From positions 186,001 to 250,000 of the IMG/VR virus record IMGVR_UViG_3300017917_001123: a DNA stretch of 64,000 nt. One strand, 5' to 3'. The notes under the pieces are model-generated. The model was given only the letters and a program-made list of their open reading frames with translations, was not told the DNA's origin and searched no databases. Below, piece by piece: positions 33,710 through 64,000 of the stretch (position 1 is the first letter of the stretch; each line of letters starts with the position of its first letter). The position numbers and the translations under genes are program-made.

Positions 33710-33710
33710 A

Positions 33711-39655: not shown

Positions 39656-39703
39656 ACTTGCTCCTTTAGTGTCTGTGTAGTATAGCACCAATTTACCAGT
39701 TTG

Positions 39704-47265: not shown

Positions 47266-47823
47266 TTGACCCTGAAAATTGCTCAAAGCCTATTTGATCT
47301 TGTAGAAGGTTCTGTGCTAGAGCTGGGCTCGCATGACGGGTCGTGGTTTACCCAGTATCTAGTTGATCGTGCTGGTAGTGTCTGCTGTATAGAGCTAGAT
47401 GGTATTGCCCTAGCCCGTGTACGTGAACAATGGCCTAGAGTGCGCTGTCTACAAGCAGACTTTCATCAGGCTGTTTCGGGAGTGGGTTGTTACGATAACG
47501 TAGTTCTCTTTGGTGTGTTAGGTCATACCCCCAACCCACTGGGCTTGTTAGAAGATATTGTACACTATGTCAAACCCCGGCGTATATTCCTAGAAGCAGA
47601 GCCCGGAGGTGTTGTGCGTTGCGTTAGGGAGGGTGTTAATCAACCCGGACAGCGTCAAAGTCGTAGGGCTACCTGTGGACTCAGCATACAGTTAGGCACA
47701 CGCATATATACGGATGCTCTGGCTAATTTGGGCTACAAGCCCATTAGGACTTATAGGGAGTCAGAGGGCATCAAACAAGGATTAGAATACACAGTCTATG
47801 ATCTACACACAACAAGCACGTAG
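47266..47823 (+). CDS. Class I SAM-dependent methyltransferase
   Basis: VLELGSHDG, IE, YDNVVLFGVLGH motifs. Confidence 0.75.
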   Translation: MTLKIAQSLFDLVEGSVLELGSHDGSWFTQYLVDRAGSVCCIELDGIALARVREQWPRVRCLQADFHQAVSGVGCYDNVVLFGVLGHTPNPLGLLEDIVHYVKPRRIFLEAEPGGVVRCVREGVNQPGQRQSRRATCGLSIQLGTRIYTDALANLGYKPIRTYRESEGIKQGLEYTVYDLHTTST

Positions 47824-48934
47824 CATTCCGCCCTATACAAATACCCAGGCCTACGATAAGTTTACTAGGTTGGACAATCAGCCCGTGTTTCTCTACGATG
47901 AGTTGGACAGTACCGTACACGGAGTAGAGCCCGTAGATGCTTTCAATGAGCAGGTATGGGCAGAACTAAGGGTAAATCCTGAAGCCCGACTCTTGATCAA
48001 CTTCCCCGGGGACTTTCTAAATCTACACGATATATCTAAACTAAAGCTGGCCCAAGAGCAACACTCTATACCCGCAGATCGTATCTGGGTCATAGTCATG
48101 GACGCTAACGTTGTGGACTTTGTGGAACAGCGTTGGCAGGGTGTTAGGGTCTGTGCCTATAACTTATTGTTGGCTAGAATACAGATACCACACGTTGGTA
48201 ATCCAGGCGATCAGCGTTTCAGTGTCCTGAGCCGTAACTATAGACCCTGGCGTTTAGAGTTTTACCTACATCTGCTCAAGGCAGGGGTGCTGGATCGCAC
48301 GGTCTACAGCTTTCACAACATAGACCCTTACCTTACTGGCAAAAGCATCTACACCGCAGAAGATCTCTACAACGATGCTCGCAATGCGGGCTTTGACATC
48401 AAGGACAGCCAACTTAGAAACTGGTTTGCGGGCATACCCTACGATCTACCCAACAGCAATAAGTTCAACAAACATCACAATGCTACCTACGATGCTATCC
48501 GTCGTGCGGGGGTACACCTGTTAATTGAAAGCCATTTTGATCCCTACATTTACTGGCCCAGCTACAGGCATATGGACCCTCGTGAGTTTAGCCCAGGATT
48601 CCCTACAGAAAAGACCTACAAGGCCATGGCCTGTGCTCGTCCATTTATTGCTGTGACCACACCTTACTTCTTAGAAAGTGTTAGGGCTCTGGGCTTTAAA
48701 ACATTCAGCCCTTGGATAGACGAAAGCTATGATACTATTGTAGATAACCGGGCTCGTATGCGGGCCATTGCTGATGAAGTAGCCAGACTAAACAGCCTAG
48801 ACCCAGAAGAGTTTCAGACCCTGTTCTATAATCTAAGCTCTGTAATTCTACACAATTATAATTGGGTACAAGAACTACAACGCAGAAACACCCTGCCCGA
48901 TAACTGGGCCTGGCTCAAGGAACACATAGAATGA
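47798..48934 (+). CDS. Glycosyltransferase-like protein (GT10-like C-terminus)
   Basis: IES...FPTEKTYKAM...PFI...GFKTFSPWIDESYD...HNY. Confidence 0.6.
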   Translation: MIYTQQARSIPPYTNTQAYDKFTRLDNQPVFLYDELDSTVHGVEPVDAFNEQVWAELRVNPEARLLINFPGDFLNLHDISKLKLAQEQHSIPADRIWVIVMDANVVDFVEQRWQGVRVCAYNLLLARIQIPHVGNPGDQRFSVLSRNYRPWRLEFYLHLLKAGVLDRTVYSFHNIDPYLTGKSIYTAEDLYNDARNAGFDIKDSQLRNWFAGIPYDLPNSNKFNKHHNATYDAIRRAGVHLLIESHFDPYIYWPSYRHMDPREFSPGFPTEKTYKAMACARPFIAVTTPYFLESVRALGFKTFSPWIDESYDTIVDNRARMRAIADEVARLNSLDPEEFQTLFYNLSSVILHNYNWVQELQRRNTLPDNWAWLKEHIE

Positions 48935-49683
48935 AACTAGCACAAGAGCTCTACGAATACTTTAATACCCTACACGTCAAATACCCACCCAAGGAGTATA
49001 GGGTAGATTGGCAAGAAGGTAAACCCGTACCCTACCTAGTTATAGATAACTTCTTACCTGATCATATCTACAGGGCCGCACAGGCAGAGATAAAAGATAT
49101 ACCCCCACATCAATGGACACAGTTCACACGTAGGGGTAGCCTAATGAATGAGTGTAAAAATCTAGCAGGTGCGCCCATACTACAGACCTTAACCCACTGC
49201 TTTAATAGCGGTGTGTTCTTAGATTGGCTAGAGGGCTTTACAGGCTTAGAACGTGTTATATCGGATCCACGACTTGTGGGTGCGGGCTTGAGCACATGCC
49301 AACCCGGGCATAGCCTAAAGCTACACACAGACTTTAACTGGAACGAACAGCTACATCTTAATAGGGCTATGAGCCTTATTCTATACCTAGCCCCTGAATG
49401 GGACCCTGCTTGGGGTGGGGGACTAGAGTTCTGGGACTTTGAGCGTACCCAATGTGTTAGCAAAGTGGACTGTTTGCCTAATCGCTTGTTGTTGTGGCTA
49501 TATGACGAGCGCCTAATACACGGCTACCCAGAGCCTATTCAATGCCCCCAAGGGCATCAACGTGAAAACCTGCGCTTGTTCTACTACAAGAGTAACAGCA
49601 CCCCCGAGAGCCAGCCACATCGCTCACTGTACTGGTGGGACGAGGCCCTAAAGGCCCCGTACGATGTTAGAACTGAAAAGTAA
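48931..49683 (+). CDS. 2OG-Fe(II) oxygenase (Oxy_3-like)
   Basis: LHTDFN, WGGGLEFW, NRL, HGYP...R motifs. Confidence 0.9.
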   Translation: MKLAQELYEYFNTLHVKYPPKEYRVDWQEGKPVPYLVIDNFLPDHIYRAAQAEIKDIPPHQWTQFTRRGSLMNECKNLAGAPILQTLTHCFNSGVFLDWLEGFTGLERVISDPRLVGAGLSTCQPGHSLKLHTDFNWNEQLHLNRAMSLILYLAPEWDPAWGGGLEFWDFERTQCVSKVDCLPNRLLLWLYDERLIHGYPEPIQCPQGHQRENLRLFYYKSNSTPESQPHRSLYWWDEALKAPYDVRTEK

Positions 49684-50511: not shown

Positions 50512-50536
50512 ATGGATATTTAACTTGGTATATAAC

Positions 50537-51623: not shown

Positions 51624-51634
51624 TAAATACTGAC

Positions 51635-51892: not shown

Positions 51893-52651
51893 ATGAAAAT
51901 AGTTTTAGTTACCGGGGGTTTCGACCCTATACACTCTGGACACATTGAATATCTTGAAGCCGCAAAGGAATTGGGCGATGAGTTAGTTGTCGGACTTAAC
52001 TCCGATGAATGGTTAGAACGTAAAAAGGGCAGAGCATTTATGCCCTTTGAAGAACGTCAAGCCATTATGCTTAGTATCAGACCAGTCAACTGGGTAATCA
52101 ACTTTGATGACGAAGACGGCTCTGCTAGATTTGCTATCCATGCGGTCCGTGAAAAGTTTCCGGATGCTACAATTATTTTTGCCAACGGCGGAGACCGCAC
52201 AGAAGATAATATTCCTGAAATGGATGTCGAAGATGACAATATTGAATTTGTATTTGGTGTTGGTGGCAAAAACAAAAAGAACTCTAGCAGTTGGATATTA
52301 GAAGAATGGAAGGCACCTAAAACAGAACGTCCTTGGGGATACTATCGTGTATTACATGAAGTACCTGGTACTAAGGTTAAAGAGTTAACAATTGAGCCTG
52401 GGCAGAGTTTGAGTATGCAACGCCATGCCGATCGAGCAGAGTTTTGGTTAGTAACAGAAGGGCAATGTGAAGTACGTCAACAGATGTCTAGTGGATACAC
52501 CATTCCGCCTGTTGTATTACAAACACACGACGGTATAGAAATATCAAAAGGCGAATGGCATCAACTAGTGAACCCTTTTAAGAAACCATGTCGCATTGTT
52601 GAAATACAATTTGGCGATCGATGTGTGGAAGAAGATATCGAGAGGAAGTAA
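51893..52651 (+). CDS. Cytidylyl/adenylyltransferase (HxGH) fused to type II phosphomannose-isomerase cupin
   Basis: GGFDPIHSGH, GLNSD, NGGDR, then ERPWG, SMQRH..RAEFW, IVEIQFG..EEDIER. Confidence 0.9.
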   Translation: MKIVLVTGGFDPIHSGHIEYLEAAKELGDELVVGLNSDEWLERKKGRAFMPFEERQAIMLSIRPVNWVINFDDEDGSARFAIHAVREKFPDATIIFANGGDRTEDNIPEMDVEDDNIEFVFGVGGKNKKNSSSWILEEWKAPKTERPWGYYRVLHEVPGTKVKELTIEPGQSLSMQRHADRAEFWLVTEGQCEVRQQMSSGYTIPPVVLQTHDGIEISKGEWHQLVNPFKKPCRIVEIQFGDRCVEEDIERK

Positions 52652-53544
52652 TGTATAAGTTTATCGATCCAAAGATTAACTCAGGCGACAAACTTATTAT
52701 TGGAATTGGCGACAGTTACACACAGGGTATTGGTGCTTACACAGATGCTACTTGGAAGAAACACAATGGCCGTATTCCTGTATATACTAGCGATAAAGAT
52801 CTAATTAAAGAGCAGTACGAAGGAAGTTGGGTCAATCAAATACAATCTTTGATGCCGGGTTGGAAAGGCCTTAACTTAGGTGTAGCAGGAACAGGCAATC
52901 GTTCGGCATTGAAAGAATTATACTTCCATGAACCAACGATAGCAAAAGCTAGCGAAGCCGTTGTTGTTTATCTGTTAAGTGGGTTTGAACGTTTTGATTT
53001 TATCTCAAAAGAGTTTGTCAGCGAACACGCACACTTTGAAGCTATGTGGCCAAACTATTGGGATACAGGCTGTAAAGTTCCTGAGCTGTGGAAAGCCTAT
53101 GCTGACCATGTACACTCAGATAGATTTATGGCCGGCGAGGCAATGTTAAACATTTTAGAAGCACAGATGTACTGCCAAGCTAAGGGATTTAAACTCTTGG
53201 TCATTAGCGCATTTGATACTCGCTTTCAACGTAGATGGTTTGATAGAAATTTAGTACAAGGTCTGTTTAATCTAAAGCCAACAGGAACAAACATAGACTT
53301 TATAGATCAGTTTGATTGGTCACAGGCAGTATATCCACAAGGGTGTTCTACAATTATTCATTTGTTAACTAGACTAGAAGGACACGATGATTCTATGGCC
53401 GAAGGCAGATTCTACGGTCATTATAGTAAATTGGATTTTCCATCAGAATATATCACCACTTGTGTTCACCCAACCCGCAAAGGTCATGCTATAATAGCAG
53501 AAGAAGTTGTAAAAGCAATTAAAGAACGCGGCTATGAAAATTGA
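52651..53544 (+). CDS. SGNH/GDSL hydrolase-like protein
   Basis: IGDSYT, NLGVAGTGN, HPTRKGH motifs. Confidence 0.75.
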   Translation: MYKFIDPKINSGDKLIIGIGDSYTQGIGAYTDATWKKHNGRIPVYTSDKDLIKEQYEGSWVNQIQSLMPGWKGLNLGVAGTGNRSALKELYFHEPTIAKASEAVVVYLLSGFERFDFISKEFVSEHAHFEAMWPNYWDTGCKVPELWKAYADHVHSDRFMAGEAMLNILEAQMYCQAKGFKLLVISAFDTRFQRRWFDRNLVQGLFNLKPTGTNIDFIDQFDWSQAVYPQGCSTIIHLLTRLEGHDDSMAEGRFYGHYSKLDFPSEYITTCVHPTRKGHAIIAEEVVKAIKERGYEN

Positions 53545-54127
53545 TACTGAACACTTACATTATTGGATGATGGCTATTAGACAAAGTCCAGATCCTATTC
53601 GTACAATGGATGCCTTTTGGCAAGGACAAATGAAAAGCAAGGAATGGCTTGTTGATGAACTCCGTGCTTCTGTCAACAGTCCTGTGAGCATTGACATACA
53701 CGGCGGCTGGGTAGGGGTCTTAGCAAGTATGATATTCCAAAGCGATATCATTACCAAACACATTCGTAGTGTTGATATTGATCCTACATGCGAGCCTATT
53801 GCTACAATGATGAATAAAGGCGAAGAGATAGTAGGTAAGTTCCGTGCTGTTACCGCCGACATGTGTGCTATCCGTAGCGATGCTGATGTTGTTATTAATA
53901 CAAGTTGTGAACACATTACACAAGAACAATTTGACTTTTGGAAGACTGGCATTCCTCACAATAGTCTTGTTGTACTACAGAGCAACAATTACAATATACC
54001 AGAACATGTTCGTATTGCTAATAGCCTAGATGAGTTTAACAAACAATGCGACCTACGTATTGTTTATTACAAAGGCGAACTTAAACTGCCCAACTATACT
54101 AGATACATGATTATTGGTTACGCATGA
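53534..54127 (+). CDS. SAM-dependent methyltransferase-like protein
   Basis: IHGGWVG, VDID, VINTSCEH, RYMIIG motifs. Confidence 0.7.
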   Translation: MKIDTEHLHYWMMAIRQSPDPIRTMDAFWQGQMKSKEWLVDELRASVNSPVSIDIHGGWVGVLASMIFQSDIITKHIRSVDIDPTCEPIATMMNKGEEIVGKFRAVTADMCAIRSDADVVINTSCEHITQEQFDFWKTGIPHNSLVVLQSNNYNIPEHVRIANSLDEFNKQCDLRIVYYKGELKLPNYTRYMIIGYA

Positions 54128-55179
54128 CATACCCTTCAGACATTAAAGCACTAGCAATGGAACTAACTGACAAGTGTCAGGCTAGTTGCCCTATGTGTCT
54201 GCGTAATCATTTTGGTGGAGCAGAAAGAGATATTGTCAACAATGTAGAAATAACATTGGCTGACTTCAAGCAATGGTTTCCTCCAGAGTTTATTTCTAAC
54301 TTAGAAAACTTTTATTGCTGTGGTAACTTAGGCGATCCTGCTATTGCTAAAGACTGTTTAGAGATATATCAATACGTCCGTAGTTGTAATCCTACTACAC
54401 GAATGGCTCTACACACAAATGGCAGTATGCGTAATCCTGAATGGTGGGCTAAGTTTGCTGAGATCAACACACAGATTATCTTTGGCATTGACGGGTTTAA
54501 AGGAGAGCATGAACTGTATCGCAAAGGAACTAATTGGGATAAGATAATTGCCAATGCTCGTGCGTTTATAGATGCCGGTGGCGATGCTAGATCTGATACC
54601 ATTGTATTCAAACACAACGAAGCACGTATTGATGAACTAAAGGCTTATCTAGAAAGCATCGGCTTTAAGGGTGTTAATGTATTTGCTACTAATCGGTTTT
54701 ATTCTCTGCCTGTGTTTCCTGTACAAGATAGAAACGGTAATCACATCTACGACTTAGAGCCCCCTACAGATCCAAAGTGGCATCCTGTAGTGTTTAAGCC
54801 TAACACAGTAAAGCTAGTTCAAAAAGAAGAATATCAAAAGCTAATTGATCACAGCGTTATTGAACCTAGCTGTGCTATTAAGAAAGAGATATACATCACA
54901 GCCAAGGGCGATGTGTATCCTTGTTGCTGGGCAGTTAACCATAACGACTACGATCACAAAGAACTAGATCCCAATCTTTCTATCCTGCGTGACAGATTAG
55001 TAAAGTCTACATTTGACCTAATGAGTGATATTGGGTTGCCTAACCTACACGGCAGTAATATCTTTACTGTAATGAGCAAGCACAATTGGCAAAGCAAGTT
55101 GCCTAAGCATTGGGATACAGACAAGAAGTTAATCTGTATTAAGAACTGTGCTAAGAACTTAAAACAACTCGCAGAGTAA
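54124..55179 (+). CDS. Radical SAM protein with C-terminal SPASM/twitch
   Basis: CQASCPMC, GNLGDP, HTNG, IDG, GDVYPCC, C..NC. Confidence 0.92.
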   Translation: MTYPSDIKALAMELTDKCQASCPMCLRNHFGGAERDIVNNVEITLADFKQWFPPEFISNLENFYCCGNLGDPAIAKDCLEIYQYVRSCNPTTRMALHTNGSMRNPEWWAKFAEINTQIIFGIDGFKGEHELYRKGTNWDKIIANARAFIDAGGDARSDTIVFKHNEARIDELKAYLESIGFKGVNVFATNRFYSLPVFPVQDRNGNHIYDLEPPTDPKWHPVVFKPNTVKLVQKEEYQKLIDHSVIEPSCAIKKEIYITAKGDVYPCCWAVNHNDYDHKELDPNLSILRDRLVKSTFDLMSDIGLPNLHGSNIFTVMSKHNWQSKLPKHWDTDKKLICIKNCAKNLKQLAE

Positions 55180-55833
55180 TTCTACTCCGCGCTGTCTAAT
55201 TCTTTCAATAACAGGGTTAATGACTTCATGGTCGCAGTTTAGGAATAGTTCCTTTTCGTTTGGTGATTCAAAGCCAGTGACCTGTTTGCTCTTAACAAGT
55301 TTGTTGATAGTGCCCATTAGTTCAATATAACTAGCCTGCTTCCAATCAATAGGACCATCTACTACTTTAAGATGTACTCCTTGTTTATTTGATTCGAAGT
55401 GTGGCAATAGAACTCTAATGTTAAGATGTATTCTAGGCACACCACCCCAGTTAGCCGCAACGTGTGTTTGACTAGTGTCCATATACCATGTGCGTCCGTC
55501 TGCGGGGATATGATGTAGGCGATTGTTTGTAATATCTACAAGGTAACTGTGTTCGTTAGTTATAATTGGTAAATGTATTCTATCATCTGGATCGGTGTGT
55601 GCTGTATAACTTTCTCCACTACCTAGTGTTAATAGTCTTGCTTGTCCTATATTAGGTAACACAGCTAATACATTGCCTAAAGGTGTGCCAACAAACTCTT
55701 CCTTTGTTTGCCAAGGGTCGTTAAAGAATTTACCAGTGGGCCTATTAAGATCGTATCGCTTATCTAATGTAAGGCTAAGCACTTGATCTACAATAGGTTG
55801 AATTGGAAATTTGTGTTGGAGTTCTGTTAGCAT
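55159..55833 (-). CDS. Asp/Asn beta-hydroxylase-like 2OG-Fe(II) oxygenase
   Basis: HTD, RIHLPIITN, H.A.N.G..PRIHL motifs. Confidence 0.75.
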   Translation of the reverse strand: MLTELQHKFPIQPIVDQVLSLTLDKRYDLNRPTGKFFNDPWQTKEEFVGTPLGNVLAVLPNIGQARLLTLGSGESYTAHTDPDDRIHLPIITNEHSYLVDITNNRLHHIPADGRTWYMDTSQTHVAANWGGVPRIHLNIRVLLPHFESNKQGVHLKVVDGPIDWKQASYIELMGTINKLVKSKQVTGFESPNEKELFLNCDHEVINPVIERIRQRGVELLCELF

Positions 55834-55845
55834 TTAAATATATTT

Positions 55846-56553
55846 ATGGACCTAAAAATACCCTTTGATACAAGCTGGCGTAGTGTTGCTATTGCCATGA
55901 GTGGCGGAGCAGACAGCACAATGTTAGCATACCTGATTTGTAATAACATTCCTAGCAATCGGTTGTTTACTGTTCATGTAATCAATAATATCCGTTGCTG
56001 GAAAACTAAACCTTGGCAACAATACGACTTTAATAGTGTATTGCGTTGGCTGGAGGATCGCTTTCAAAACATTACCTTTGTTGTACATAGAAACTTTGTT
56101 CCACCTGAAATGGAGTATGCTTATGGTACAATGATTACAGACGAATATGGTAAAACAGTTAGTGGCGATACTATCGAACTGCGGGCCTTTGCTGAGTATG
56201 TTTGCCTTGCTCAGGATGTTGATGCGTACTTCAATGGTGTTACCAAAAATCCAAAAGATATAGAAGGAATGCCTGCTCGTGATGTAGAGCCTACAGAAGA
56301 CAACAAACATTTAGAGCAAATGGTACATATGGGCAAATTAGTTTACCACCCATTTAGATTTGTAGATAAGAGCGAAATTGTGTTACAATATAAAGCATTG
56401 GGTTTAGATGATCTCTTTAGTTTAACTAGAAGTTGCGAAGGAGAATTTGAAAATATCACATACAAGACATATACTCCTGGACAATATGTTCCTGTATGCG
56501 GCAAATGCTTTTGGTGTAAAGAACGTGAGTGGGCAATTGAACGAACGGTTTAA
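55846..56553 (+). CDS. QueC-like PP-loop ATP pyrophosphatase
   Basis: SGGADS PP-loop, PF..DK.EI, TRSC...CGKCFWC Zn motif. Confidence 0.75.
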   Translation: MDLKIPFDTSWRSVAIAMSGGADSTMLAYLICNNIPSNRLFTVHVINNIRCWKTKPWQQYDFNSVLRWLEDRFQNITFVVHRNFVPPEMEYAYGTMITDEYGKTVSGDTIELRAFAEYVCLAQDVDAYFNGVTKNPKDIEGMPARDVEPTEDNKHLEQMVHMGKLVYHPFRFVDKSEIVLQYKALGLDDLFSLTRSCEGEFENITYKTYTPGQYVPVCGKCFWCKEREWAIERTV

Positions 56554-57802
56554 AACATTTTGTATGCATCCCTTTACGGGATTAGCAACACGCGAAGACG
56601 GCGCAGTTAAGATCTGTTGCCGTAGTCTTCCTATTGGCTGGATACAAGAACAAAGCCTAGAAGAAATATGGAACGGTGAAAAGATGCGTGAAGTTCGCCG
56701 CCAAGTACAAAACGGAGAACGACCTGATGTATGTAAGCCTTGTTTTGATTTAGAAGATCAAGGAGTTGAAAGTCTACGTCAGCGTCACATCAAAGGCGAC
56801 ATCCCAGAAGCACGTATTAATCTATATCCTAGTGCTCTTACCAAGTTGACTAACAATTACACAATGCCTTTTGAATTTCCTACAATGGAAATCAAACTAA
56901 ACAATCTATGTAATTTAAAATGTCGAATGTGTAACCCTTTAGACAGCACTAATTGGAAAGACTGGGATGCTGTTGTTCCGTTCTATAAAAAAGAAAACAA
57001 TTATCTTGTTCCTACAATTGACAGGCTTGTAGATACACCAGGCAAATACATTGGTCCTTTTGATGACAGCGATAATTGGTGGAAGAGTTTTGAGAAACTA
57101 ATTCCACATTTTAAACGAGTAGAGTTTGCCGGCGGCGAACCCTTGATGGATCCTAACCACTACAAGATACTAGACATGCTAAAGCCCTACGGCAAGAACA
57201 TGGAAATCAAATATGCTACAAACGGAACTACTCTAGGAATTAGCAAAGGAAGAACTATTCATGACTATTGGCCACATTTTAAGTCAGTTGCCGTTAACGT
57301 CTCTTTGGACGGCATTGGCTCTGTTTATGACTACATTCGGACTAACAGTAGCTTTAGCCAAGTTGAAGAAAACATTAAAGAAATCAAATCAATCCCAAAT
57401 GTAAGTAGGGTAGTTGGGGCATTTACAGCACAAGCTGGTAACATACTACAAGCCGCAGACTGTATAGATTATTTCTTAAACAAAATGGGCATTGTATTTT
57501 ATTCACACAGAGTGAGTTATCCAAACGTGTTGTCCGCACAGGTATTGCCTAATGAACTAAAACAAGTAGCAATTGATAGATTGCGAGAAGTTAGTATGCG
57601 TGTGCCTACATTTGATATTGTAAAACAACATCCTATCCTAGAAAAGATTACACAGCAACAGATACAAGACAACATTAACTATCTACAGGCTAAGGACGAA
57701 AGCGATCGTTGGCAAGAGTTCTTAGACTTTAACTTTGCTTTAGATGCCACACGTGGACAAAGTTTGTTAGACGCTGTTCCAGAATTTAAGGCGTATGTAT
57801 GA
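56537..57802 (+). CDS. Radical SAM protein with N-terminal twitch/SPASM-like domain
   Basis: CMHPF..CC...C..C, CNLKCRMC, AGGEP. TTG start inferred. Confidence 0.9.
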   Translation: MNERFKTFCMHPFTGLATREDGAVKICCRSLPIGWIQEQSLEEIWNGEKMREVRRQVQNGERPDVCKPCFDLEDQGVESLRQRHIKGDIPEARINLYPSALTKLTNNYTMPFEFPTMEIKLNNLCNLKCRMCNPLDSTNWKDWDAVVPFYKKENNYLVPTIDRLVDTPGKYIGPFDDSDNWWKSFEKLIPHFKRVEFAGGEPLMDPNHYKILDMLKPYGKNMEIKYATNGTTLGISKGRTIHDYWPHFKSVAVNVSLDGIGSVYDYIRTNSSFSQVEENIKEIKSIPNVSRVVGAFTAQAGNILQAADCIDYFLNKMGIVFYSHRVSYPNVLSAQVLPNELKQVAIDRLREVSMRVPTFDIVKQHPILEKITQQQIQDNINYLQAKDESDRWQEFLDFNFALDATRGQSLLDAVPEFKAYV

Positions 57803-58605
57803 GATTGTCTTTGTGGGCAGGCAATACTGAACTAACTTTCAAAGTTCGTGATACAGATATAGCACAACGTTGGGCACAGGAAGTTGCTAAGAACTATCCA
57901 CTATATGAAACAGATAGATTTCAAGGATGGCCCACAGATAAAGATATTAAATGGTACAAAGAACAGCTACAGCATCAAGTAGATGTTATCTTCGAGCATA
58001 GAGGATATCCGAGACTAGAAGTAACTACAATAGATCAAAACACACTAAACTATCTACATAAGATATTTGAAACTGTTCGTGGAGAGATTAACACAGGCAC
58101 AGACATCTACATGACAGGAGATGCTAATTTTCAATATGCTGTAGATAGACTTAATATTCTAGTACACGAATGCGAACACTTTATGCGTAACACAGCCTAC
58201 CCTAGCATTGTTGTTACATTTAAGGATAGACCTAGAATACCTTTACTAGAAGAAGACTACAATCACTTTACCTTTGCTTGGGAATACGGTGCTGTCTACA
58301 TTAACTATTGTGAAGTAGGCAAGCCTATTCTAGATGTTATCAAAGACGGTGATGACCTAGTAGGCGAAGATAACATTCGTCCGTTAGAATATTATAGTTC
58401 TGACTTTATGGTAAAGCTGGGTCCTAGCACAAACAGCGACGACTGGCATAAGAAAGCAGAAGTTGTATCTAAATGGCTACAGAACCATCCACGTAAGTTT
58501 AAACACACATCGCTAGGACTTATTCCTGTAGCAGACTTAGATCCCGTACAGTTCTTTGACTTATCAAAGATAGAACCAAAGGTTACTCGTGTATGTATAG
58601 TGTAA
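57799..58605 (+). CDS. Hypothetical protein in radical SAM cluster
   Basis: LNYLHKIFE, LNILVHECE, YINYCEVGK. Possibly metal binding. Confidence 0.7.
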   Translation: MRLSLWAGNTELTFKVRDTDIAQRWAQEVAKNYPLYETDRFQGWPTDKDIKWYKEQLQHQVDVIFEHRGYPRLEVTTIDQNTLNYLHKIFETVRGEINTGTDIYMTGDANFQYAVDRLNILVHECEHFMRNTAYPSIVVTFKDRPRIPLLEEDYNHFTFAWEYGAVYINYCEVGKPILDVIKDGDDLVGEDNIRPLEYYSSDFMVKLGPSTNSDDWHKKAEVVSKWLQNHPRKFKHTSLGLIPVADLDPVQFFDLSKIEPKVTRVCIV

Positions 58606-59489
58606 CTAGTCGATGGCCGCATCAGAATAGTATTAAGGTAGAATGGAACCTTGGCAAGCGTTGTAACTACGACTGCTCCTACTGCCCCAGTTCTATACAC
58701 GATAATACAAGTCCGCACACTGACATAGAGATATTAAAGTCTGTAGTAGACAAACTAATGACTTTGGGTAAACCTATTCGTTTAAGTTTTACAGGTGGCG
58801 AGCCATGCGTACATCCTAAATTTGCTGACCTTGTACGATATGCCAAACAACAAGGAGTAAGTTGGATCAGTGTAACAACTAACGGCACATTGCCTTACGA
58901 GTTCTATGCTAGCCTACCTGTTGATCAGTATGTATTCAGCATACACTTAGAATACGATTGGCGCCGGGTGTTTAATACTGTAGAAAGTGTAGTAGACTTA
59001 ACCAAGAGTAAAGTCATTGCCCAAATTATGGCACATCATGATTACATGGATGCGGCCAGACAGTTACGATCTAGATGTTTGTTAGCAGAGATTCCAAATA
59101 CAGTTAGACGCATACGTTGGACAGAAGGCGACCACGATCTATTTGATGACATGCGTTATCATCCAGACGATTTAAAGTGGATCAAAGAACAAGAAGCAAC
59201 AGTACAAGGTAATTGTGTTGTTGACGATAAGATAATACACGCTAACGATGTAATTAAACTACATCTAAACAAATTTAAAGGTTGGACTTGTCACGCAGGT
59301 ATAGAAAGCCTAATGATAAATTGGGACGGTGACGTACATCGTGCTACTTGTAGAGTAGGTGGTAGTCTAGGCAACATATACGAAGGTACCTTTGTTGTCC
59401 CTAGCGATCCAGTCACTTGTGACCGTAACTTCTGTACCTGCGCGGCAGACATTCCATTAACCAAATATGATCCAAACCACAGCAATTAA
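58593..59489 (+). CDS. Radical SAM protein with C-terminal Cys cluster
   Basis: CNYDCSYC, TGGEP, TTNG, C...C...C.C. Confidence 0.92.
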   Translation: MYSVTSRWPHQNSIKVEWNLGKRCNYDCSYCPSSIHDNTSPHTDIEILKSVVDKLMTLGKPIRLSFTGGEPCVHPKFADLVRYAKQQGVSWISVTTNGTLPYEFYASLPVDQYVFSIHLEYDWRRVFNTVESVVDLTKSKVIAQIMAHHDYMDAARQLRSRCLLAEIPNTVRRIRWTEGDHDLFDDMRYHPDDLKWIKEQEATVQGNCVVDDKIIHANDVIKLHLNKFKGWTCHAGIESLMINWDGDVHRATCRVGGSLGNIYEGTFVVPSDPVTCDRNFCTCAADIPLTKYDPNHSN

Positions 59490-60579
59490 TCTAAGCACGG
59501 ACGAAGGCATGATGGTTACCTGGGATATAGGTAAGCGTTGTAACTACGACTGTACCTATTGTGATGCTACACGACACACAAACACAAGTCCACACGCTAG
59601 TCTAGAAGAACTTGTTGAAACGTTTGAGTTTATTCGTGCTTGGACGGATCTATACAACAGCAAACGTAAAACTCCTACCTACATTAACATTAACTTCACA
59701 GGCGGAGAGCCTACAGTTAATCCAAACTTCTGGAAACTTGTAGATTACATTAAACAGTTTCCTAACTTCCATATGGGCCTAACAACTAATGGCACATGGG
59801 ACATAAGACGCTTGCCTAACATTATAGATAACTTTGTAGGTGTTACTGTTAGTTGGCATGCCGAAGCTGATCAAAAGTTACGAACACGGGCATTGAACAA
59901 TATACTTGCTATCAGTAAGAGTCATTTGTGGCTACAGGTAAATGTAATGCTACACACAGACTTATGGGACGAAACAATGGAAGCCTGTAAGTTTTTAGAT
60001 GACAACAATATCAATTACAATCCTGTGCCTATTGGTGATGGCCCGGATACTGCTACATGGGTTGCGGATAAGAACGGAGTAATGCGTAGAACTACGCATA
60101 CCTATACAGCAGAACAACAGCAATGGTTCTTTAACAAAATGAACATCACTGCCAAGATAGCAGAAGCAAAGAAAGGCAACAAGGTAGGACGCACTTGTTG
60201 TGGAGGACGTTGCCTAACTGCTAAAGTAGACAACGAATGGCAACCAGTTAAGTTAGTTAATACAGAGTTTAAAGAATGGAACTGTATGGTTGATTGGTAC
60301 TTCCTACACATTGATCAAGAGGTAGGAGAAGTATACCATCATCAGACTTGTCAAGCCCTGCGTGGAGGTAAGCGCGGTGCTATTGGTAAGTTAAGCGATA
60401 AGACTGTTCTACTAGATAATCTGCGTCAACTACTAGAACAGCCTAGCATTACGCCTGTTGTATGTCCAAATCAGCGATGTGGATGTGGGATGTGTGTTCC
60501 GAAAGCAAAGAGCTTTGATGACTTTGAACTGATGTGGAACAATCTAATAAGTGTGCCAGTTCAGGGAACACAGTCTTAA
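59467..60579 (+). CDS. Radical SAM protein, paralog of 58593..59489
   Basis: CNYDCTYC, TGGEP, CPNQRCGCGMC. Confidence 0.92.
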   Translation: MIQTTAINLSTDEGMMVTWDIGKRCNYDCTYCDATRHTNTSPHASLEELVETFEFIRAWTDLYNSKRKTPTYININFTGGEPTVNPNFWKLVDYIKQFPNFHMGLTTNGTWDIRRLPNIIDNFVGVTVSWHAEADQKLRTRALNNILAISKSHLWLQVNVMLHTDLWDETMEACKFLDDNNINYNPVPIGDGPDTATWVADKNGVMRRTTHTYTAEQQQWFFNKMNITAKIAEAKKGNKVGRTCCGGRCLTAKVDNEWQPVKLVNTEFKEWNCMVDWYFLHIDQEVGEVYHHQTCQALRGGKRGAIGKLSDKTVLLDNLRQLLEQPSITPVVCPNQRCGCGMCVPKAKSFDDFELMWNNLISVPVQGTQS

Positions 60580-61921
60580 AGTCTGTTCCTCTAATACTAT
60601 CTAAGTTCTTAATGTATTCAGCAAACGCAGGCAATTGACTGCTATGGTCTTCGCTGTCCATAAAGTCTAACACCGCTTGCCAACGCTTCCACCCGTATGG
60701 ATTGATCTTCCAGAAGTCTTCGTCCTGTCTGTAGTTCTCGTGTAGCCAGTTGGCTAGTTCACCAAACAGTTTGCGTACTTCTGCTTTGTCTGCTTGTGGC
60801 AAGCATTTGATGCTTAAGAACGTAGGCAAGTACAGCAAGTGCATGTTAACTAAGCCACCGCCCATCTGTACATCTCCCGGAACAAGTCCTAGATTAATCT
60901 TCTTAAAGTTCTCTTTCACCTTCCAACGGATAAAGTCTGGTAGATGTTTAACATTAAGGATTTGAATAGCAGTAGCAATACTAACCTGTATGTTGTCTGG
61001 AGTGTTGTCTAGTTTGTGTAGGTTCTTAACAATAGTATCCCAATCGCTAGGATAACGAATATAATAGTTGCGAGCATCTGTAGCATCTAAACTTACAGCA
61101 AACTTTACTTTAGAAAAGTTCTTCCATAAGTCAATAGTTTCGTCGTCTAGCAATAATGCGTTACTATTGTAACGAATAAGGATCTTGTCTGCGTAGCCTT
61201 GTCTAATAATCTCTTGTAGGAACTTCTTGTGTTCCTTAATCATTAACGGCTCGCCTCCGGCAAAGTAAACTTGTTTTAAGTTTGGAATCTGTGCGTTAAT
61301 CTGTTCCCAGAAGTCCGGGTTCTCGTACCATACATTATTAAATGTATCTGCGTCCCAACGCATCTGTTCTGCTACAATTGGAAAGGTTGTGCGCTTTAAT
61401 AGTTTATCATGGTCCTGTACCCAACGACTGCTATCGTGCGGTGAGCACATCACACACTTGAGGTTACAGGTATGCCCTAGTCGTAGATCTAAGTAGGTTA
61501 GTTTATCTGGAACAACTCCATCGACTGTGTTAGCAACAAGTTCTTCTAGATCAATGCCGTCATTCATCCATGTGTATGTTTCCCATAGGCGTTTACTGAT
61601 AACATCTTTGTCTTCTTCGGCAATACACTTTGAACAGCTAGCAGGGATTTGTCCAGCAAGCATTGTCTTACGAACATCGCGCATGTATTCGTTGTTCCAT
61701 GCTTCTAAGGGCTTGCTGTTACCAAAGTTAGCAGGTTGTCCTGATTCGTTCTTAACTAGGCCTACTGTATGATCTGTGCCTGCTCCGCTAGCGTTAGCCG
61801 AACAACATAGTCGCATATCGCCGTTAGGTCTTGTAGCAAAGTGAATCCAAGGTAGTACGCAGAAGGTACGACTACCTGTCTTCTCTTCAAGTATTTGGTA
61901 GAATTTTTCTTTTCGTGTCAT
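60449..61921 (-). CDS. Radical SAM protein with N-terminal twitch-like domain, paralog of 56537..57802
   Basis: CVLPW..CC...CSKC, CNLKCVMC, AGGEP. Confidence 0.92.
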   Translation of the reverse strand: MTRKEKFYQILEEKTGSRTFCVLPWIHFATRPNGDMRLCCSANASGAGTDHTVGLVKNESGQPANFGNSKPLEAWNNEYMRDVRKTMLAGQIPASCSKCIAEEDKDVISKRLWETYTWMNDGIDLEELVANTVDGVVPDKLTYLDLRLGHTCNLKCVMCSPHDSSRWVQDHDKLLKRTTFPIVAEQMRWDADTFNNVWYENPDFWEQINAQIPNLKQVYFAGGEPLMIKEHKKFLQEIIRQGYADKILIRYNSNALLLDDETIDLWKNFSKVKFAVSLDATDARNYYIRYPSDWDTIVKNLHKLDNTPDNIQVSIATAIQILNVKHLPDFIRWKVKENFKKINLGLVPGDVQMGGGLVNMHLLYLPTFLSIKCLPQADKAEVRKLFGELANWLHENYRQDEDFWKINPYGWKRWQAVLDFMDSEDHSSQLPAFAEYIKNLDSIRGTDFKTVFPELAHLLDCSTSVQSHQSSLLSEHTSHIHIADLDIQQA

Positions 61922-62486
61922 TGCACATATTCGAAGTTAGTCGCTTGATGCTTTCATCTGTAGCACCAAACTTAGTTTTAATCTGCTCTATGGTAAAAGG
62001 AGTTAACTTAAATTCAAAGTCTACGTTATTATAACACGAATTGTTAATCCAGTCATTAATTACTTTATAAACATCGGTAAAAGGAATACCTGTATCTGTG
62101 CTAACCGCATCTTCTAACATTGAAATGGTTAAATGTAATAGAGTTACTTTTGGATCTAGGCTCAGTGAACGGCAACGTTCTGCTAGCAGTTTCTTTTTAC
62201 GGCTGTAGTCGCTCTGTATAAGTTGGTCATACTGCCCTGCGATACTGCCCATAACTACAAGATTAGTTTTACCAGCAAGCGCATCTAGCAAAGGCAGTTG
62301 TCCTGCGTTAGTGTTCAAGATTACTATGTCGCAAGTTTCTGCTACTGGTATAACCTTGCTAACGTCTTGCTCTAAGTCTAATCCTGAAAGTCTGCTAGCA
62401 CCAATAACTTCGTGCCCGTCCTTAATAAATTGACCAAAGAGGTACTTACCTAGCCCACTAGTGTGGCCTGTAATGAATATTCTCAT
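61887..62486 (-). CDS. Short-chain dehydrogenase/reductase-like protein
   Basis: ITGHTSGLG, GS, YSRKK (YxxxK). Confidence 0.8.
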   Translation of the reverse strand: MRIFITGHTSGLGKYLFGQFIKDGHEVIGASRLSGLDLEQDVSKVIPVAETCDIVILNTNAGQLPLLDALAGKTNLVVMGSIAGQYDQLIQSDYSRKKKLLAERCRSLSLDPKVTLLHLTISMLEDAVSTDTGIPFTDVYKVINDWINNSCYNNVDFEFKLTPFTIEQIKTKFGATDESIKRLTSNMCNDTKRKILPNT

Positions 62487-63100
62487 ATCTGTCCTGTTAT
62501 TTTTAATAGAGCAGGCATGTCTTCTCTCTTAACTGAAAAGAACATGTGTACTCTAGGAGTTGTATCTTGGTTCTTAACGCTGTGCATTAATGTTGTATCT
62601 AATGCCCAAGAGGATCCATCTGCCGGATAGTGTTCCCAACTTATAGGTTGTCTGTTCTCGTCGTCCCACGTGAAGAAACTCTTAGGAGGACTGTAAATTG
62701 GAAAGTGTATGTGCCAAGCATCGTCGGTATGCGACTCGATATAGTTTCCCCCGGGTGTTTCTGATATGCCTAGTCTATAGGCCATTGGGATCTTTTCTAA
62801 CAATCGTTCGGCAATACCGAAAACCATATCAGTTCTTTTCTTGCCGTCTGTAAAGTCGCTGGTTAAAACATTCCACGGAGCACATATCTGATCGTCATTC
62901 TTTAGATATGTTGTCAAAGCCCAACCGCTGGCCATCTTTGTTAAATCGATGTTTGGATCGTTGTAGGCTTCGCGCTTGATGTATTGCTTCTGTTCTGTCG
63001 CAACCCATTTACGATCAGCAAACTTAGTCTTAATGATATCATAGAACTCTCTTAGTTCGTTAATATCTGCTGTGATGTTTAACTTTATTTGCCTATCCAT
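62483..63100 (-). CDS. Asp/Asn beta-hydroxylase-like oxygenase, paralog of 55159..55833
   Basis: HTD, IHFPI, PADG, HSVKN...PRVH motifs. Confidence 0.75.
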   Translation of the reverse strand: MDRQIKLNITADINELREFYDIIKTKFADRKWVATEQKQYIKREAYNDPNIDLTKMASGWALTTYLKNDDQICAPWNVLTSDFTDGKKRTDMVFGIAERLLEKIPMAYRLGISETPGGNYIESHTDDAWHIHFPIYSPPKSFFTWDDENRQPISWEHYPADGSSWALDTTLMHSVKNQDTTPRVHMFFSVKREDMPALLKITGQI

Positions 63101-63141
63101 GAAAATATTTATAGGTGCTCTAGCCTAGCTTAAATATTTGT

Positions 63142-64000
63142 ATGGCCTTCTACAACACAATCAAAGAGTTAGACATAGAACACAGCGCAGTTTGTAATGC
63201 GGCCTGTCCTCAGTGTACAAGAGAGCTTCGCCCCGGAGACTACAGTTGGTTTAACCAAACATGGCTTCCTACAGAGTTTTACCAAGAGCGTATTCCACAA
63301 TATGTATTAGACAACTTAGAAACTATCTTCTTTAGTGGCATGGTAGGCGATCCTTGTGCGGCTCCTAACTTCTTAGAAGTGTGTAAGGTTATTAAAGAAC
63401 GTGCTCCGCATATCCATATTAAGATTAGTACTAATGGAGGTATGCGTAGTCCTGCTTGGTGGGCAGAGCTTGCTAGTATATTAGGGCAAGGTAGTTGGGT
63501 TCGTTTTGCTATTGACGGACTAGCAGACACTAATCATATCTATCGTGTTAATGTAAGTTGGAATAAAGTTGTTGCTAACGTAGATGCGTTTATTAAATCT
63601 GGCGGAGAAGCAGAATGGCAGTATATTGTGTTCAAACACAACGAGCATCAAGTAGAAGAAGCAAAGAAATTATCTGAAGATATGGGCTTTGCTAGATTTG
63701 TTATTAGACGCAGTCATCGCTTCTTGCTAGATGCTCTATTTGAAACACAGTACGTGGGTATCTCTGTTCCTACTAATGACAAATATGTACATCCGTTGAT
63801 TCTACAAAAGAAGAAAGTGTTTAACATTGTAGATGCGTTAAAAGTATCCAACGATAGTAGTGTAACTTGTGAAGTACAAGGACGCAAGAGTGTTTACATA
63901 TCAGCAGATGGTTGGGTGTTTCCTTGTGTATATACAGGAACATGTGTTCACTTAATGAAGACACGCAGTCTACATGACGGTTGGACTAAGTTATGGGAAG
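63142..64000 (+). CDS. Radical SAM protein, paralog of 54124..55179, 3'-truncated by window (not in ORF track)
   Basis: Manual translation MAFYNTIKELDIEHSAVCNAACPQC...GMVGDP...STNG...IDG...GWVFPC. TAAATA-N5-ATG start. Confidence 0.9.
   Translation, partial: MAFYNTIKELDIEHSAVCNAACPQCTRELRPGDYSWFNQTWLPTEFYQERIPQYVLDNLETIFFSGMVGDPCAAPNFLEVCKVIKERAPHIHIKISTNGGMRSPAWWAELASILGQGSWVRFAIDGLADTNHIYRVNVSWNKVVANVDAFIKSGGEAEWQYIVFKHNEHQVEEAKKLSEDMGFARFVIRRSHRFLLDALFETQYVGISVPTNDKYVHPLILQKKKVFNIVDALKVSNDSSVTCEVQGRKSVYISADGWVFPCVYTGTCVHLMKTRSLHDGWTKLWE

What the first reader, a model, noticed from the sequence alone, without database searches (positions are those of the whole stretch)
53534..64000. Six radical SAM enzymes in three paralog pairs with hydroxylases, QueC-like ATPase, SDR and methyltransferase
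Seen: pairs 54124/63142, 56537/61921(-) and 58593/59467, each with auxiliary Cys clusters, and a hydroxylase pair 55833(-)/63100(-). Late-type TAAATA starts. Established: SPASM/twitch radical SAMs typically modify peptides or proteins or mature cofactors. Inference: a late-expressed pathway for virion protein/glycan tailoring or DNA base hypermodification. No precursor peptide was evident.
Basis: partly seen in the sequence, partly recalled or inferred. Interest (0 to 1): 0.65.

Follow-up and report, generated by a model that had tools for sequence, protein, structure and literature searches.

The report
Radical SAM tailoring island in jumbo phage
A 331-kb pond phage carries a ~50-kb, probably late-expressed island with 15 radical SAM enzymes and many oxygenases, whose conserved core recurs in dozens of uncultured aquatic phages and most likely builds or decorates an unusual sugar-containing surface molecule.

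Summary
The window contains six radical SAM (rSAM) genes in three paralog pairs, each with conserved auxiliary cysteines, plus a hydroxylase pair and TAAATA promoter-like starts.

It is only the left third of a larger island, genome 233.8-285 kb of a 331.6-kb distant T4-like jumbo phage from a pond metagenome. The island holds:
- 15 rSAMs in five families, six of them NCBIfam N_Twi_rSAM (N-terminal twitch domain)
- about 12 Fe/2OG-type oxygenases
- three B12-type rSAMs
- methyltransferases, an aminotransferase and a NodU-type carbamoyltransferase
- GT-A- and GT-B-fold proteins and a sugar nucleotidyltransferase-cupin
- two Fe-S carrier proteins at its edge

A core of seven to nine genes is conserved at 50-85% identity in 64 IMG/VR contigs. 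A four-gene mini-module sits beside the tail genes of the cultured Ralstonia phage RsoM2USA.

Bacterial N_Twi_rSAM homologues lie in glycoconjugate loci in five of six contexts examined. Hallmark DNA-hypermodification genes are absent, and I found no precursor peptide, transporter or membrane protein.

Best reading (about 0.45): a cytoplasmic, late glycoconjugate-tailoring toolkit, probably for virion decoration. The chemistry is unknown. The closest precedent is the unexplained rSAM clusters of Campylobacter phages CP220/CPt10.

The parts
47798..48934 (+). GT-B-like protein, paralog of L002:4853-6046(-)
   Evidence: 27% identity, E 2e-13 to g274853. The AF2 model of g274853 (pLDDT 63) matches only GT-B glycosyltransferases. 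No Pfam hit.
48931..49683 (+). Fe(II)/2OG oxygenase (2OG-FeII_Oxy_3)
   Evidence: PF13640, E 6e-12.
51893..52651 (+). Sugar-phosphate nucleotidyltransferase fused to a PMI-type cupin
   Evidence: PF01467 plus PF01050/PF07883. Resembles RfaE domain II and GMP_PMI. Preceded by a TAAATA-N5-ATG small ORF at 51635-51847.
52621..53544 (+). Possible GDSL/SGNH hydrolase (weak)
   Evidence: PF00657, E 8e-4, below cut-off. GDSL domains recur in the bacterial N-Twi loci.
53534..54127 (+).
   Evidence: Homologues in 64 IMG/VR loci, median 52% identity, and in RsoM2USA ORF347. No family or PDB match.
54124..55179 (+). rSAM family D, copy 1 (C-terminal auxiliary cluster)
   Evidence: PF04055 37 bits, weak SPASM hit. 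Conserved C18/22/25 plus C66/267/268/338/342. Present in 64 loci.
55159..55833 (-). Asp/Asn beta-hydroxylase-family Fe/2OG oxygenase (AspH1)
   Evidence: PF05118 26 bits. Core member in most related loci.
55835..55846 (.). Palindromic bidirectional TAAATATATTTA promoter-like element
   Evidence: Read directly. 5 nt before the ATG at 55846(+) and 7 nt before the start at 55833(-). Enrichment statistics.
55846..56553 (+). PP-loop ATP pyrophosphatase with a QueC-like C-terminal Cys motif
   Evidence: PF06508 23.7 bits and PF01171. TilS-N PP-loop. Invariant SGGxDS and C197/C218/C221/C224 in 17 homologues. No PDB relative.
56537..57802 (+). N_Twi_rSAM copy 1 (N-terminal twitch/SPASM plus rSAM core)
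   Evidence: NF033640 324 bits against a cut-off of 170. SPASM at residues 9-69. Orthologue clade at 66-81% identity.
57799..58605 (+). Unknown 268-aa protein
   Evidence: No family hit. Homologues in 6 loci.
58593..59489 (+). rSAM family B, copy 1
   Evidence: PF04055 46 bits. Five conserved C-terminal Cys. Only the N-terminal ~90 aa match viperin models.
59467..60579 (+). rSAM family B, copy 2 (nine C-terminal Cys)
   Evidence: PF04055 51 bits.
60449..61921 (-). N_Twi_rSAM copy 2, the anchor of the comparative analysis
   Evidence: NF033640 397 bits. 3,861 metagenomic homologues at E <= 1e-10, the best 120 at 72-91% identity. 67 IMG/VR loci.
61887..62486 (-). Short SDR-like Rossmann protein (weak)
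   Evidence: PF00106/PF01370, E 0.006. Weak NCBIfam SDR hits.
62483..63100 (-). Asp/Asn beta-hydroxylase-family oxygenase (AspH2)
   Evidence: PF05118 34 bits.
63106..63136 (.). Divergent promoter-like pair: TATAAATA (-) at 63106-63113 and TAAATA (+) at 63131-63136
   Evidence: Read directly. TATAAATA occurs 10 times genome-wide against about 42 expected, and 9 of the 10 lie just upstream of gene starts.
63142..64000 (+). rSAM family D, copy 2, cut by the window end. The island continues for about 35 kb (L001, L002).
   Evidence: PF04055 40.5 bits. Full ORF ends at genome 250194. Downstream content.

Best explanation
The finding is the left third of a ~50-kb island (genome 233.8-285 kb) in a distant T4-like jumbo myophage. 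The island is made of short divergent operons, each headed by the phage's TAAATA (T4-late-like) element. All its products are soluble.

I read it as a cytoplasmic glycoconjugate-building and tailoring toolkit that works in four steps:
1. Sugar-activating enzymes supply nucleotide sugars. These are the nucleotidyltransferase-cupin here, and a PfkB kinase, a UDP-sugar dehydrogenase and epimerases elsewhere in the genome.
2. GT-A- and GT-B-fold proteins attach the sugars.
3. Fifteen rSAMs perform radical C-H chemistry. They comprise six N-terminal-twitch, three family B, two family D, three B12-type and one Zn-ribbon type. About 12 Fe/2OG oxygenases act alongside them.
4. Methyltransferases, a class III aminotransferase, a PP-loop amidating or adenylating enzyme and a NodU-type carbamoyltransferase finish the decoration.

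Two phage-encoded A-type Fe-S carriers probably help load the clusters. The most likely acceptor is a virion surface protein or fibre assembled late in the cytoplasm. The alternative is a host envelope glycolipid intermediate.

Shown: gene content, paralogy, conserved catalytic and auxiliary cysteines, promoter-motif statistics, conservation of the core in related phages, GT folds, and the glycoconjugate context of the bacterial homologues.

Inferred: late timing, that the genes act in one pathway, that the substrate is a sugar or glycoconjugate, and the acceptor.
For: - rSAM inventory and families.
- Conserved CX3CX2C and auxiliary Cys.
- Conserved core in 64 loci, and synteny.
- Four separate, well-supported phage N-Twi clades distinct from the bacterial clade.
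- GT-A fold with DGDAD for g274180: pLDDT 92, Foldseek probability about 1.0 to WrtF, RmlT, ArnC, TarS and PBCV-1 A64R, VIA Z 9-10.5.
- GT-B fold for g274853.
- Nucleotidyltransferase-cupin.
- Carbamoyltransferase.
- UDP-Glc/GDP-Man dehydrogenase family, PfkB kinase and NAD epimerase elsewhere in the genome.
- RsoM2USA ORF347-350 has MT197-like, GT-A-like, N-Twi rSAM and GT-A-like genes next to the tail sheath and structural genes.
- Bacterial N_Twi_rSAM contexts hold UbiA, GT1/GT2/GT4, PMT_2, epimerase, DegT, carbamoyltransferase, GDSL, several PhyH/WelO5, AspH and an ABC ATPase in 5 of 6 loci.
- Promoter motif shared with TerL and fibre genes.
- Fe-S carriers at the island edge.
- Only 1 of 65 island proteins has a hydrophobic segment.
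Against: - No rSAM here reaches the cut-off of any functionally defined NCBIfam equivalog, so no reaction can be assigned.
- GT-like genes lie within 10 kb of the anchor in only 7 of 30 long related loci. The rSAM core is therefore not obligatorily adjacent to glycosyltransferases.
- Classical GT1 and GT2 Pfam families are absent from the genome. The GT calls rest on predicted folds, one of them with low confidence.
- The GT-A fold is shared with nucleotidyltransferases.
- Asp/Asn beta-hydroxylases, SPASM/twitch rSAMs and B12-rSAMs are equally typical of peptide modification.
- One bacterial context (Chromatiales) is not a glycan locus.
- There are no expression data.
Confidence: 0.45

Rival explanations
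1. Peptide or protein post-translational modification without a sugar focus. The rSAMs (SPASM/twitch, B12-type), Asp/Asn hydroxylases, other Fe/2OG oxygenases, the halogenase and the aminotransferase would modify a ribosomal peptide (proteusin-like RiPP) or residues of virion fibre proteins directly.
For: - The best sub-threshold NCBIfam hits include many RiPP maturases.
- There are three PF05118 hydroxylases.
- B12-rSAMs are present.
- The aminotransferase resembles the daptide-type RiPP enzyme at E 2.5e-38, among many other hits.
- Iyer et al. 2010 predicted peptide, tail-collar and collagen-like substrates for similar dioxygenase arrays, including one in cyanophage Syn9.
- One fibre-family protein has a 36-residue GXY stretch.
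Against: - No conserved small ORF, repeat-core peptide, peptidase or exporter is present in or beside the island.
- All RiPP equivalog scores are 5- to 20-fold below their cut-offs.
- The bacterial homologues' neighbours are glycan genes, not precursor or RRE genes.
Confidence: 0.2
2. Small-molecule or lipid metabolism. The island would make or remodel a cofactor, an aminoglycoside- or nucleoside-like metabolite, or host membrane lipid or lipid A acyl chains, so as to change host physiology or the envelope.
For: - The B12-rSAMs hit lipid and hopanoid B12-rSAM models best, and the Zn-ribbon rSAM hits Tes and HMPTM.
- A relative's island holds a fatty-acid desaturase.
- The AspH family includes lipid A hydroxylases (my own knowledge).
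- One bacterial locus abuts LpxD and LpxC.
- The N-Twi array of Vibrio phage K566 lies near PagP.
- Timms et al. proposed metabolic boosting for the CP220/CPt10 rSAMs.
Against: - All those hits are far below family cut-offs.
- There are no membrane proteins, acyl carrier or transporter genes in the island.
- Late-type promoters shared with structural genes fit a virion-linked role better than host metabolic boosting.
Confidence: 0.15
3. DNA base hypermodification. The PP-loop (QueC-like) enzyme, the rSAMs, the aminotransferase, the carbamoyltransferase and the GT-B proteins would build a hypermodified or glycosylated base.
For: - A QueC-like C-terminus is present.
- A QueD/PTPS homologue lies at genome 26724-27245.
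- The GT-B model also matches T4 beta-glucosyltransferase.
- Late expression fits modification after replication.
Against: - The genome has no TGT/DpdA, ThyA-family hydroxymethylase, TET/JBP or C5-DNA methylase.
- The QueC match is marginal, and no QueC or QueE equivalog is reached.
- QueD is about 210 kb from the island.
Confidence: 0.08
4. Defence or counter-defence. The family B rSAMs would be viperin-like enzymes that make nucleotide analogues.
For: The top PADLOC and NCBIfam hits of family B are prokaryotic viperins, E 1e-14 to 1e-18. Viperin structures are the top PDB sequence hits.
Against: - The matches cover only the first ~90 residues, which is the generic rSAM cluster-binding segment.
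- Scores are 54-63 bits against a cut-off of 180.
- Family B has a conserved five-to-nine-Cys C-terminal auxiliary domain that viperins lack.
Confidence: 0.03

Closest known systems
Radical SAM gene clusters of Campylobacter T4-like phages CP220 and CPt10 (Timms et al. 2010, PMC2853527)
   Same: Large T4-related myophages with 11-12 rSAM genes. These include an exchangeable ~10-kb cluster with five rSAMs plus an amino-group-transfer enzyme. Their function is unknown.
   Different: - The rSAM families differ. The N-Twi anchor finds no Campylobacter phage at E <= 1e-5, and family B matches them only over about 90 aa.
- Here there are 15 rSAMs together with about 12 oxygenases, GT-fold proteins and a carbamoyltransferase.
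- Here a core is conserved across dozens of uncultured aquatic phages.
Uncharacterised Bacteroidota loci with tandem N_Twi_rSAM (NF033640) genes
   Same: They carry the same named rSAM subfamily, often two or three in tandem. It is combined with multiple Fe/2OG oxygenases (PhyH, WelO5, AspH), a NodU-type carbamoyltransferase, GDSL, an epimerase and glycosyltransferases.
   Different: - Only 20-28% identity to the phage proteins, in a separate clade.
- The bacterial loci add UbiA, a GT-C (PMT_2) and an ABC ATPase for membrane-linked assembly and export. The phage lacks UbiA and any membrane component.
Tandem dioxygenase/halogenase arrays of cyanophage Syn9 (Iyer et al. 2010, PMC2938197)
   Same: A phage-encoded array of many diverse Fe/2OG oxygenases with Trp-halogenase-type enzymes, predicted to tailor peptides or metabolites. 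A Trp-halogenase-family gene flanks this island.
   Different: The Syn9 arrays are described as lacking rSAM enzymes. Here the rSAMs are the conserved core and the oxygenases the variable shell.
Virus-encoded glycosylation machineries (chlorovirus PBCV-1 A64R capsid glycosylation; mimivirus fibril glycans; mycobacteriophage virion glycosylation). Recalled from my own knowledge, apart from the A64R structural match.
   Same: The virus carries its own GT-A enzymes and nucleotide-sugar enzymes to decorate virion proteins in the cytoplasm. PBCV-1 A64R is among the structural matches of g274180.
   Different: None of those systems is known to use radical SAM enzymes. Glycosylation of this phage's virion is not shown.
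Aminoglycoside and nucleoside-antibiotic sugar tailoring (BtrN twitch dehydrogenase, GenK B12-rSAM C-methylase, BlsE decarboxylase, TobZ carbamoyltransferase). A 'works like' comparison from my own knowledge.
   Same: The same combination of twitch-type rSAM, B12-rSAM, class III aminotransferase and O-carbamoyltransferase acting on sugars. BlsE is a weak PDB hit of family B.
   Different: No equivalog-level similarity. The twitch domain is N-terminal here. There is no aminocyclitol or nucleoside core pathway.

Membership tests
Radical SAM superfamily (PF04055) | Pfam score above the gathering cut-off and a CX3CX2C cluster motif | tested here: met
   Fourteen genome hits are above cut-off, and a 15th (g276030) is below Pfam but above the NF033640 cut-off. 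CX3CX2C is conserved at 96-100% in homologues.
NCBIfam NF033640 N_Twi_rSAM | Full-length score above 170 bits, with a Cys-rich twitch/SPASM domain N-terminal to the rSAM core | tested here: met
   Six genes score 241-397 bits. Pfam SPASM lies at residues ~6-100, ahead of PF04055. Five N-terminal Cys are conserved.
RiPP-maturing SPASM/twitch rSAMs | An adjacent precursor peptide gene, and a score reaching a RiPP-maturase equivalog | tested here: not met
   No conserved small ORF or repeat peptide is present in the island. All RiPP equivalog scores are far below cut-off. An RRE domain was not specifically searched.
Class B (cobalamin-binding) rSAM methylases | An N-terminal B12-binding domain (PF02310) plus the rSAM core | tested here: inconclusive
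   L001:3348-4856(-) passes PF02310 (35.9 against 32.1 bits). Its 49%-identical paralog scores 21.9 bits. The third paralog has no PF02310 hit but aligns from residue 16.
QueC (7-cyano-7-deazaguanine synthase) | A full-length QueC profile match, and a preQ0 pathway context (FolE, QueD, QueE, TGT/DpdA) | tested here: not met
   Only profile positions 136-207 match, at 23.7 bits. NCBIfam gives only a TilS-N PP-loop hit. TGT is absent. QueD is present but about 210 kb away. FolE was not tested.
Viperin / pVip | A full-length match including the C-terminal nucleotide-binding region, above cut-off | tested here: not met
   Matches cover profile positions 2-94 only, at 54-63 bits against a cut-off of 180.
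Asp/Asn beta-hydroxylase family (PF05118) | Pfam score above the gathering cut-off | tested here: met
   26, 34.1 and 35.6 bits against a cut-off of 22.6. The substrate (protein, lipid or other) is not testable here.
GT-A glycosyltransferases | The nucleotide-diphospho-sugar transferase fold with a DxD motif | tested here: met
   The model has pLDDT 92. Foldseek probability is about 1.0 to many GT-A enzymes, and VIA Z is 9-10.5. D57 and D59 are invariant. The fold is shared with nucleotidyltransferases, so activity is inferred.
Phage DNA hypermodification systems | A base-installing enzyme: ThyA-family hydroxymethylase, TGT/DpdA, TET/JBP or a C5-methylase | tested here: not met
   No hit at E <= 0.01-0.1 in the 93%-complete genome.
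T4-type late promoters | A TATAAATA-like -10 element upstream of late (structural) genes, read by a gp55-type sigma factor | tested here: inconclusive
   The motif is depleted genome-wide and concentrated upstream of starts, including TerL and fibre genes. A gp55/gp33 homologue and actual timing were not tested.

The most novel reading that the evidence does not exclude
N-terminal-twitch rSAMs, with the family B and D rSAMs and the PP-loop enzyme, form a previously unrecognised and widespread phage pathway. It performs radical chemistry on sugars, for example C-C or C-methyl branching, epimerisation or deoxygenation. The products are hyper-tailored glycans displayed on virions of a cosmopolitan clade of aquatic jumbo phages. 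Bacteroidota use the same enzyme family for their own surface glycoconjugates.
Probability: 0.3. Interest if true: 0.8.

Novelty: new variant of a known kind. Interest (0 to 1): 0.62.

Why it matters
rSAM-rich clusters in large phages have been unexplained since CP220/CPt10 in 2010. This case adds three things:
- a conserved, widely distributed core, with thousands of metagenomic homologues at 60-90% identity;
- a named but functionally blank rSAM subfamily, N_Twi_rSAM;
- a concrete, testable link to glycoconjugate biosynthesis in both phages and Bacteroidota.

Cultured phages with reduced versions make the question tractable at the bench. RsoM2USA ORF347-350 is a four-gene module, and Vibrio phage K566 carries four tandem N-Twi genes.

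If the enzymes act on sugars, they would be new carbohydrate-modifying radical enzymes. Virion glycan decoration would then become a common trait of environmental jumbo phages, with consequences for adsorption, host range and particle stability.

Tried and rejected
- Megablast of the region against INPHARED gave no match.
- AmoC-phage idea: PF04896 is absent, but no control genome rang either, so this is uninformative.
- Literature searches for N-terminal twitch rSAMs or rSAM islands in jumbo phages found nothing specific.
- A pattern search of GTDB genomes with the six-paralog alignment failed because no conserved stretch was available.
- Sequence and profile searches of the PDB gave only generic or no hits: N-Twi (SkfB, E 6e-4), family B, the PP-loop protein and MT197.
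- hhalign of MT197 against the island's two true methyltransferases gave probability below 1%. The 'methyltransferase' label is therefore dropped.
- The Protein Atlas gave only weak GT2/GT92 and GT10 leads, at 0.79-0.87. I used them only to choose what to fold.
- Classical GT1 and GT2, and UbiA, are absent.
- Expression cannot be tested. The only strong holder is the probable source pond metagenome and there are no RNA runs.
- The exact-sequence look-up of the L073 N-Twi protein failed.
- TAG, TGA or TAA reassignment does not open long ORFs in the ORF-poor, GC-rich stretch at 32.6-39.7 kb.
- Complex prediction and the large representative search were not used. No claim here rests on binding or on absence of relatives.

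Full report
**Where the window lies.** The window is bases 186,001-250,000 of a single 331,570-bp virus record that CheckV rates 93% complete. PHROGs identify a tail sheath, tail tube, large terminase, gp32-type SSB, UvsX and gp41-type helicases in the first 25 kb. The terminase is 50% identical to that of the Pseudomonas PA5oct group and 43-46% identical to Rak2/CBB/Phosso-type jumbo phages. This is therefore a distant T4-like jumbo myophage. No INPHARED record matches the region at nucleotide level. The only run holding it nearly whole is a pond metagenome.

**The observation.**
- The three pairs are true paralogs at 26-31% identity, E 1e-22 to 1e-42.
- The auxiliary cysteine sets are conserved across 17-63 homologues per family.
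- The two hydroxylases are PF05118 members.
- The 'QueC-like ATPase' is a PP-loop protein whose QueC match is marginal and covers only the C-terminus.
- The 'SDR' call is weak.
- The 'methyltransferase' at 53534-54127 has no support from Pfam, NCBIfam, a PDB profile search or hhalign against the island's real methyltransferases.

**The promoter signal.** TAAATA is three-fold depleted in the genome, with 146 copies against about 484 expected. Yet 59 copies lie within 40 nt upstream of a same-strand ORF start, against 3.5 expected. Nine of the ten full TATAAATA sites do the same. The motif precedes the terminase and fibre-family genes but not the gp32, UvsX or helicase genes. That fits a late class, although timing was not measured. 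In the finding it occurs as a palindromic bidirectional element at 55835-55846 and as a divergent pair at 63106-63136.

**The finding is the edge of something larger.** PF04055 hits continue to genome 277 kb. All-against-all blastp groups the rSAMs into five families:
- six N-terminal-SPASM/twitch proteins;
- three family B;
- two family D;
- three B12-type;
- one with an HMPTM-type Zn ribbon.

The six N-terminal-twitch proteins all exceed the cut-off of NCBIfam NF033640 (N_Twi_rSAM), which is absent from 14 control genomes.

Other genes interleaved with the rSAMs:
- a third PF05118 hydroxylase;
- two 2OG-FeII_Oxy_5 proteins;
- five small HxD...H cupin-like proteins, judged by eye;
- two class I methyltransferases;
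- a class III aminotransferase;
- a NodU-type carbamoyltransferase;
- at the right edge, two A-type Fe-S carriers (PF01521) and a Trp-halogenase-family protein.

Only one of 65 island proteins has a hydrophobic segment. The few short ORFs in the island show no repeat or core-peptide features.

**Conservation.** The anchor N-Twi protein (60449-61921-) has 3,861 metagenomic homologues at E <= 1e-10, the best 120 at 72-91% identity, and 67 IMG/VR loci.
- In 55-64 of these loci the same neighbours recur at median 52-71% identity: MT197, rSAM D, the two N-Twi proteins and the family B proteins. The PP-loop protein and AspH1 recur in about 35 loci.
- Thirty long loci hold a median of seven rSAMs within 10 kb of the anchor.
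- Around this core the content varies: a halogenase, a fatty-acid desaturase, CSD-oxygenase fusions and B12-rSAMs.
- A quick ML tree resolves four well-supported phage N-Twi clades: NTwi1, NTwi2, NTwi6 with RsoM2USA, and a local NTwi3-5 expansion. They are separate from a bacterial clade. The paralogs are therefore old and were not recently captured from any sampled bacterium.

**Clues to function.**
- *Folds.* Two unannotated paralog pairs in the island were folded. g274180 (pLDDT 92) has the GT-A nucleotide-diphospho-sugar transferase fold with an invariant DxD motif. g274853 (pLDDT 63) matches only GT-B glycosyltransferases. Its paralog lies at window 47798-48934.
- *Sugar genes.* The gene at 51893-52651 is an RfaE-II-like nucleotidyltransferase fused to a PMI-type cupin. 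Elsewhere the genome has a UDP-Glc/GDP-Man dehydrogenase-family gene, a PfkB kinase and two NAD epimerase/dehydratases. In some relatives these sit inside the island.
- *Cultured phages.* RsoM2USA has a syntenic mini-module (MT197-like, GT-A-like, N-Twi rSAM, GT-A-like) next to its tail sheath and proven structural proteins. Vibrio phage K566 has four tandem N-Twi genes.
- *Bacterial contexts.* N_Twi_rSAM homologues, mostly from Bacteroidota, were examined in six contexts. In five they lie, often in tandem, among UbiA, GT1/GT2/GT4, PMT_2, epimerase, DegT, NodU-type carbamoyltransferase, GDSL, several PhyH/WelO5 oxygenases, an AspH and an ABC ATPase. One Chromatiales context is unrelated.

The phage island therefore mirrors an uncharacterised bacterial glycoconjugate toolkit but lacks its membrane and export parts.

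**Rivals.**
- *DNA hypermodification.* The genome has no ThyA-family hydroxymethylase, TGT/DpdA, TET/JBP or C5-methylase. A QueD homologue exists far from the island.
- *RiPP or direct protein modification.* This stays open because the enzyme classes fit it. However, no precursor, peptidase or exporter was found, and all RiPP equivalogs are far below cut-off.
- *Lipid or metabolite remodelling.* Scattered weak hints only.
- *Viperin-like nucleotide chemistry.* Rejected, because only the generic first ~90 residues match.

**Comparison with the literature.** Campylobacter phages CP220 and CPt10 carry 11-12 rSAM genes, including a swappable five-rSAM cluster of unknown role. Cyanophage Syn9 carries a tandem array of ten dioxygenases, and related neighbourhoods include halogenases. 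Sullivan et al. list carbamoyltransferases, halogenases and oxygenases as sporadic cyanophage genes. I found no paper on N-terminal-twitch rSAMs in phages or on their function.

**Verdict.** The best-supported reading, at about 0.45, is a late, cytoplasmic glycoconjugate-tailoring island, probably for virion decoration. The actual chemistry and the acceptor are unknown. I rate it a new variant of a known but unexplained kind of phage gene cluster.

Noticed in passing
Genome-wide; in the window e.g. 7469-7486 (TerL), 46076-46093, 49684-50522(-), 51624-51637, 55835-55848, 63131-63144: The TAAATA element shows a sharp spacing peak 5 nt before the ATG (14 genes at 5 nt, plus 8 at 4 or 7 nt), with no room for a Shine-Dalgarno sequence. 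This suggests a class of leaderless late transcripts. A second class has 18-31-nt leaders.
   Followed up: partly
Genome 329801-329875 (outside the window): ARAGORN finds a tRNA with anticodon CUA, an amber suppressor that it labels tRNA-Pyl. Reading TAG as sense did not open long ORFs in the one region tested.
   Followed up: partly
Genome 320035-320428 (outside the window): A permuted (two-piece) tmRNA gene with tag peptide ANDEVYALAA. The tag resembles proteobacterial tags, which may hint at the host.
   Followed up: no
Window 32600-39700: A ~7-kb stretch with GC about 0.48-0.50, against about 0.40 elsewhere. No ORF is longer than 184 aa under code 11 or any single stop reassignment, and there is no Rfam hit in it. 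The only hit in the scanned 29.5-46.5 kb is a tRNA at 43806-43879(-).
   Followed up: partly
L002:12581-12901(-) and L002:13344-13670(+) (genome 282581-283670): Two paralogous A-type Fe-S cluster carrier genes (PF01521, IscA/ErpA-like) sit at the right edge of the rSAM island. This is consistent with phage-supplied cluster delivery to 15 Fe-S enzymes.
   Followed up: partly
L002:13679-14929(+) (genome 283679-284929); L111:3094-3309(+): A Trp-halogenase-family flavoprotein flanks the island. A translation initiation factor IF-1 homologue lies nearby, and in related phages it marks the island border.
   Followed up: no
Genome 30483-38849, 96779-110761, 140648-172114 and others: A 13-member paralog family of very large (up to about 4,400 aa) fibre-like proteins shares an N-terminal tail-fibre motif. 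One member (94158-96776) has a 36-residue GXY stretch. The 4,660-aa ORF at 96779-110761 is the genome's largest but did not cluster with this family. These are candidate acceptors for tailoring.
   Followed up: no
L106 (Chitinophagaceae MAG, CAZYXR010000002.1, 35017-56324): A bacterial locus with six PhyH genes, a WelO5-like oxygenase, a SPASM rSAM, a multihaem-cytochrome-like protein, a Wzt-like ABC ATPase, an N-Twi rSAM and an AspH, next to ManC, LpxD and LpxC. It appears to be an uncharacterised system in its own right.
   Followed up: partly
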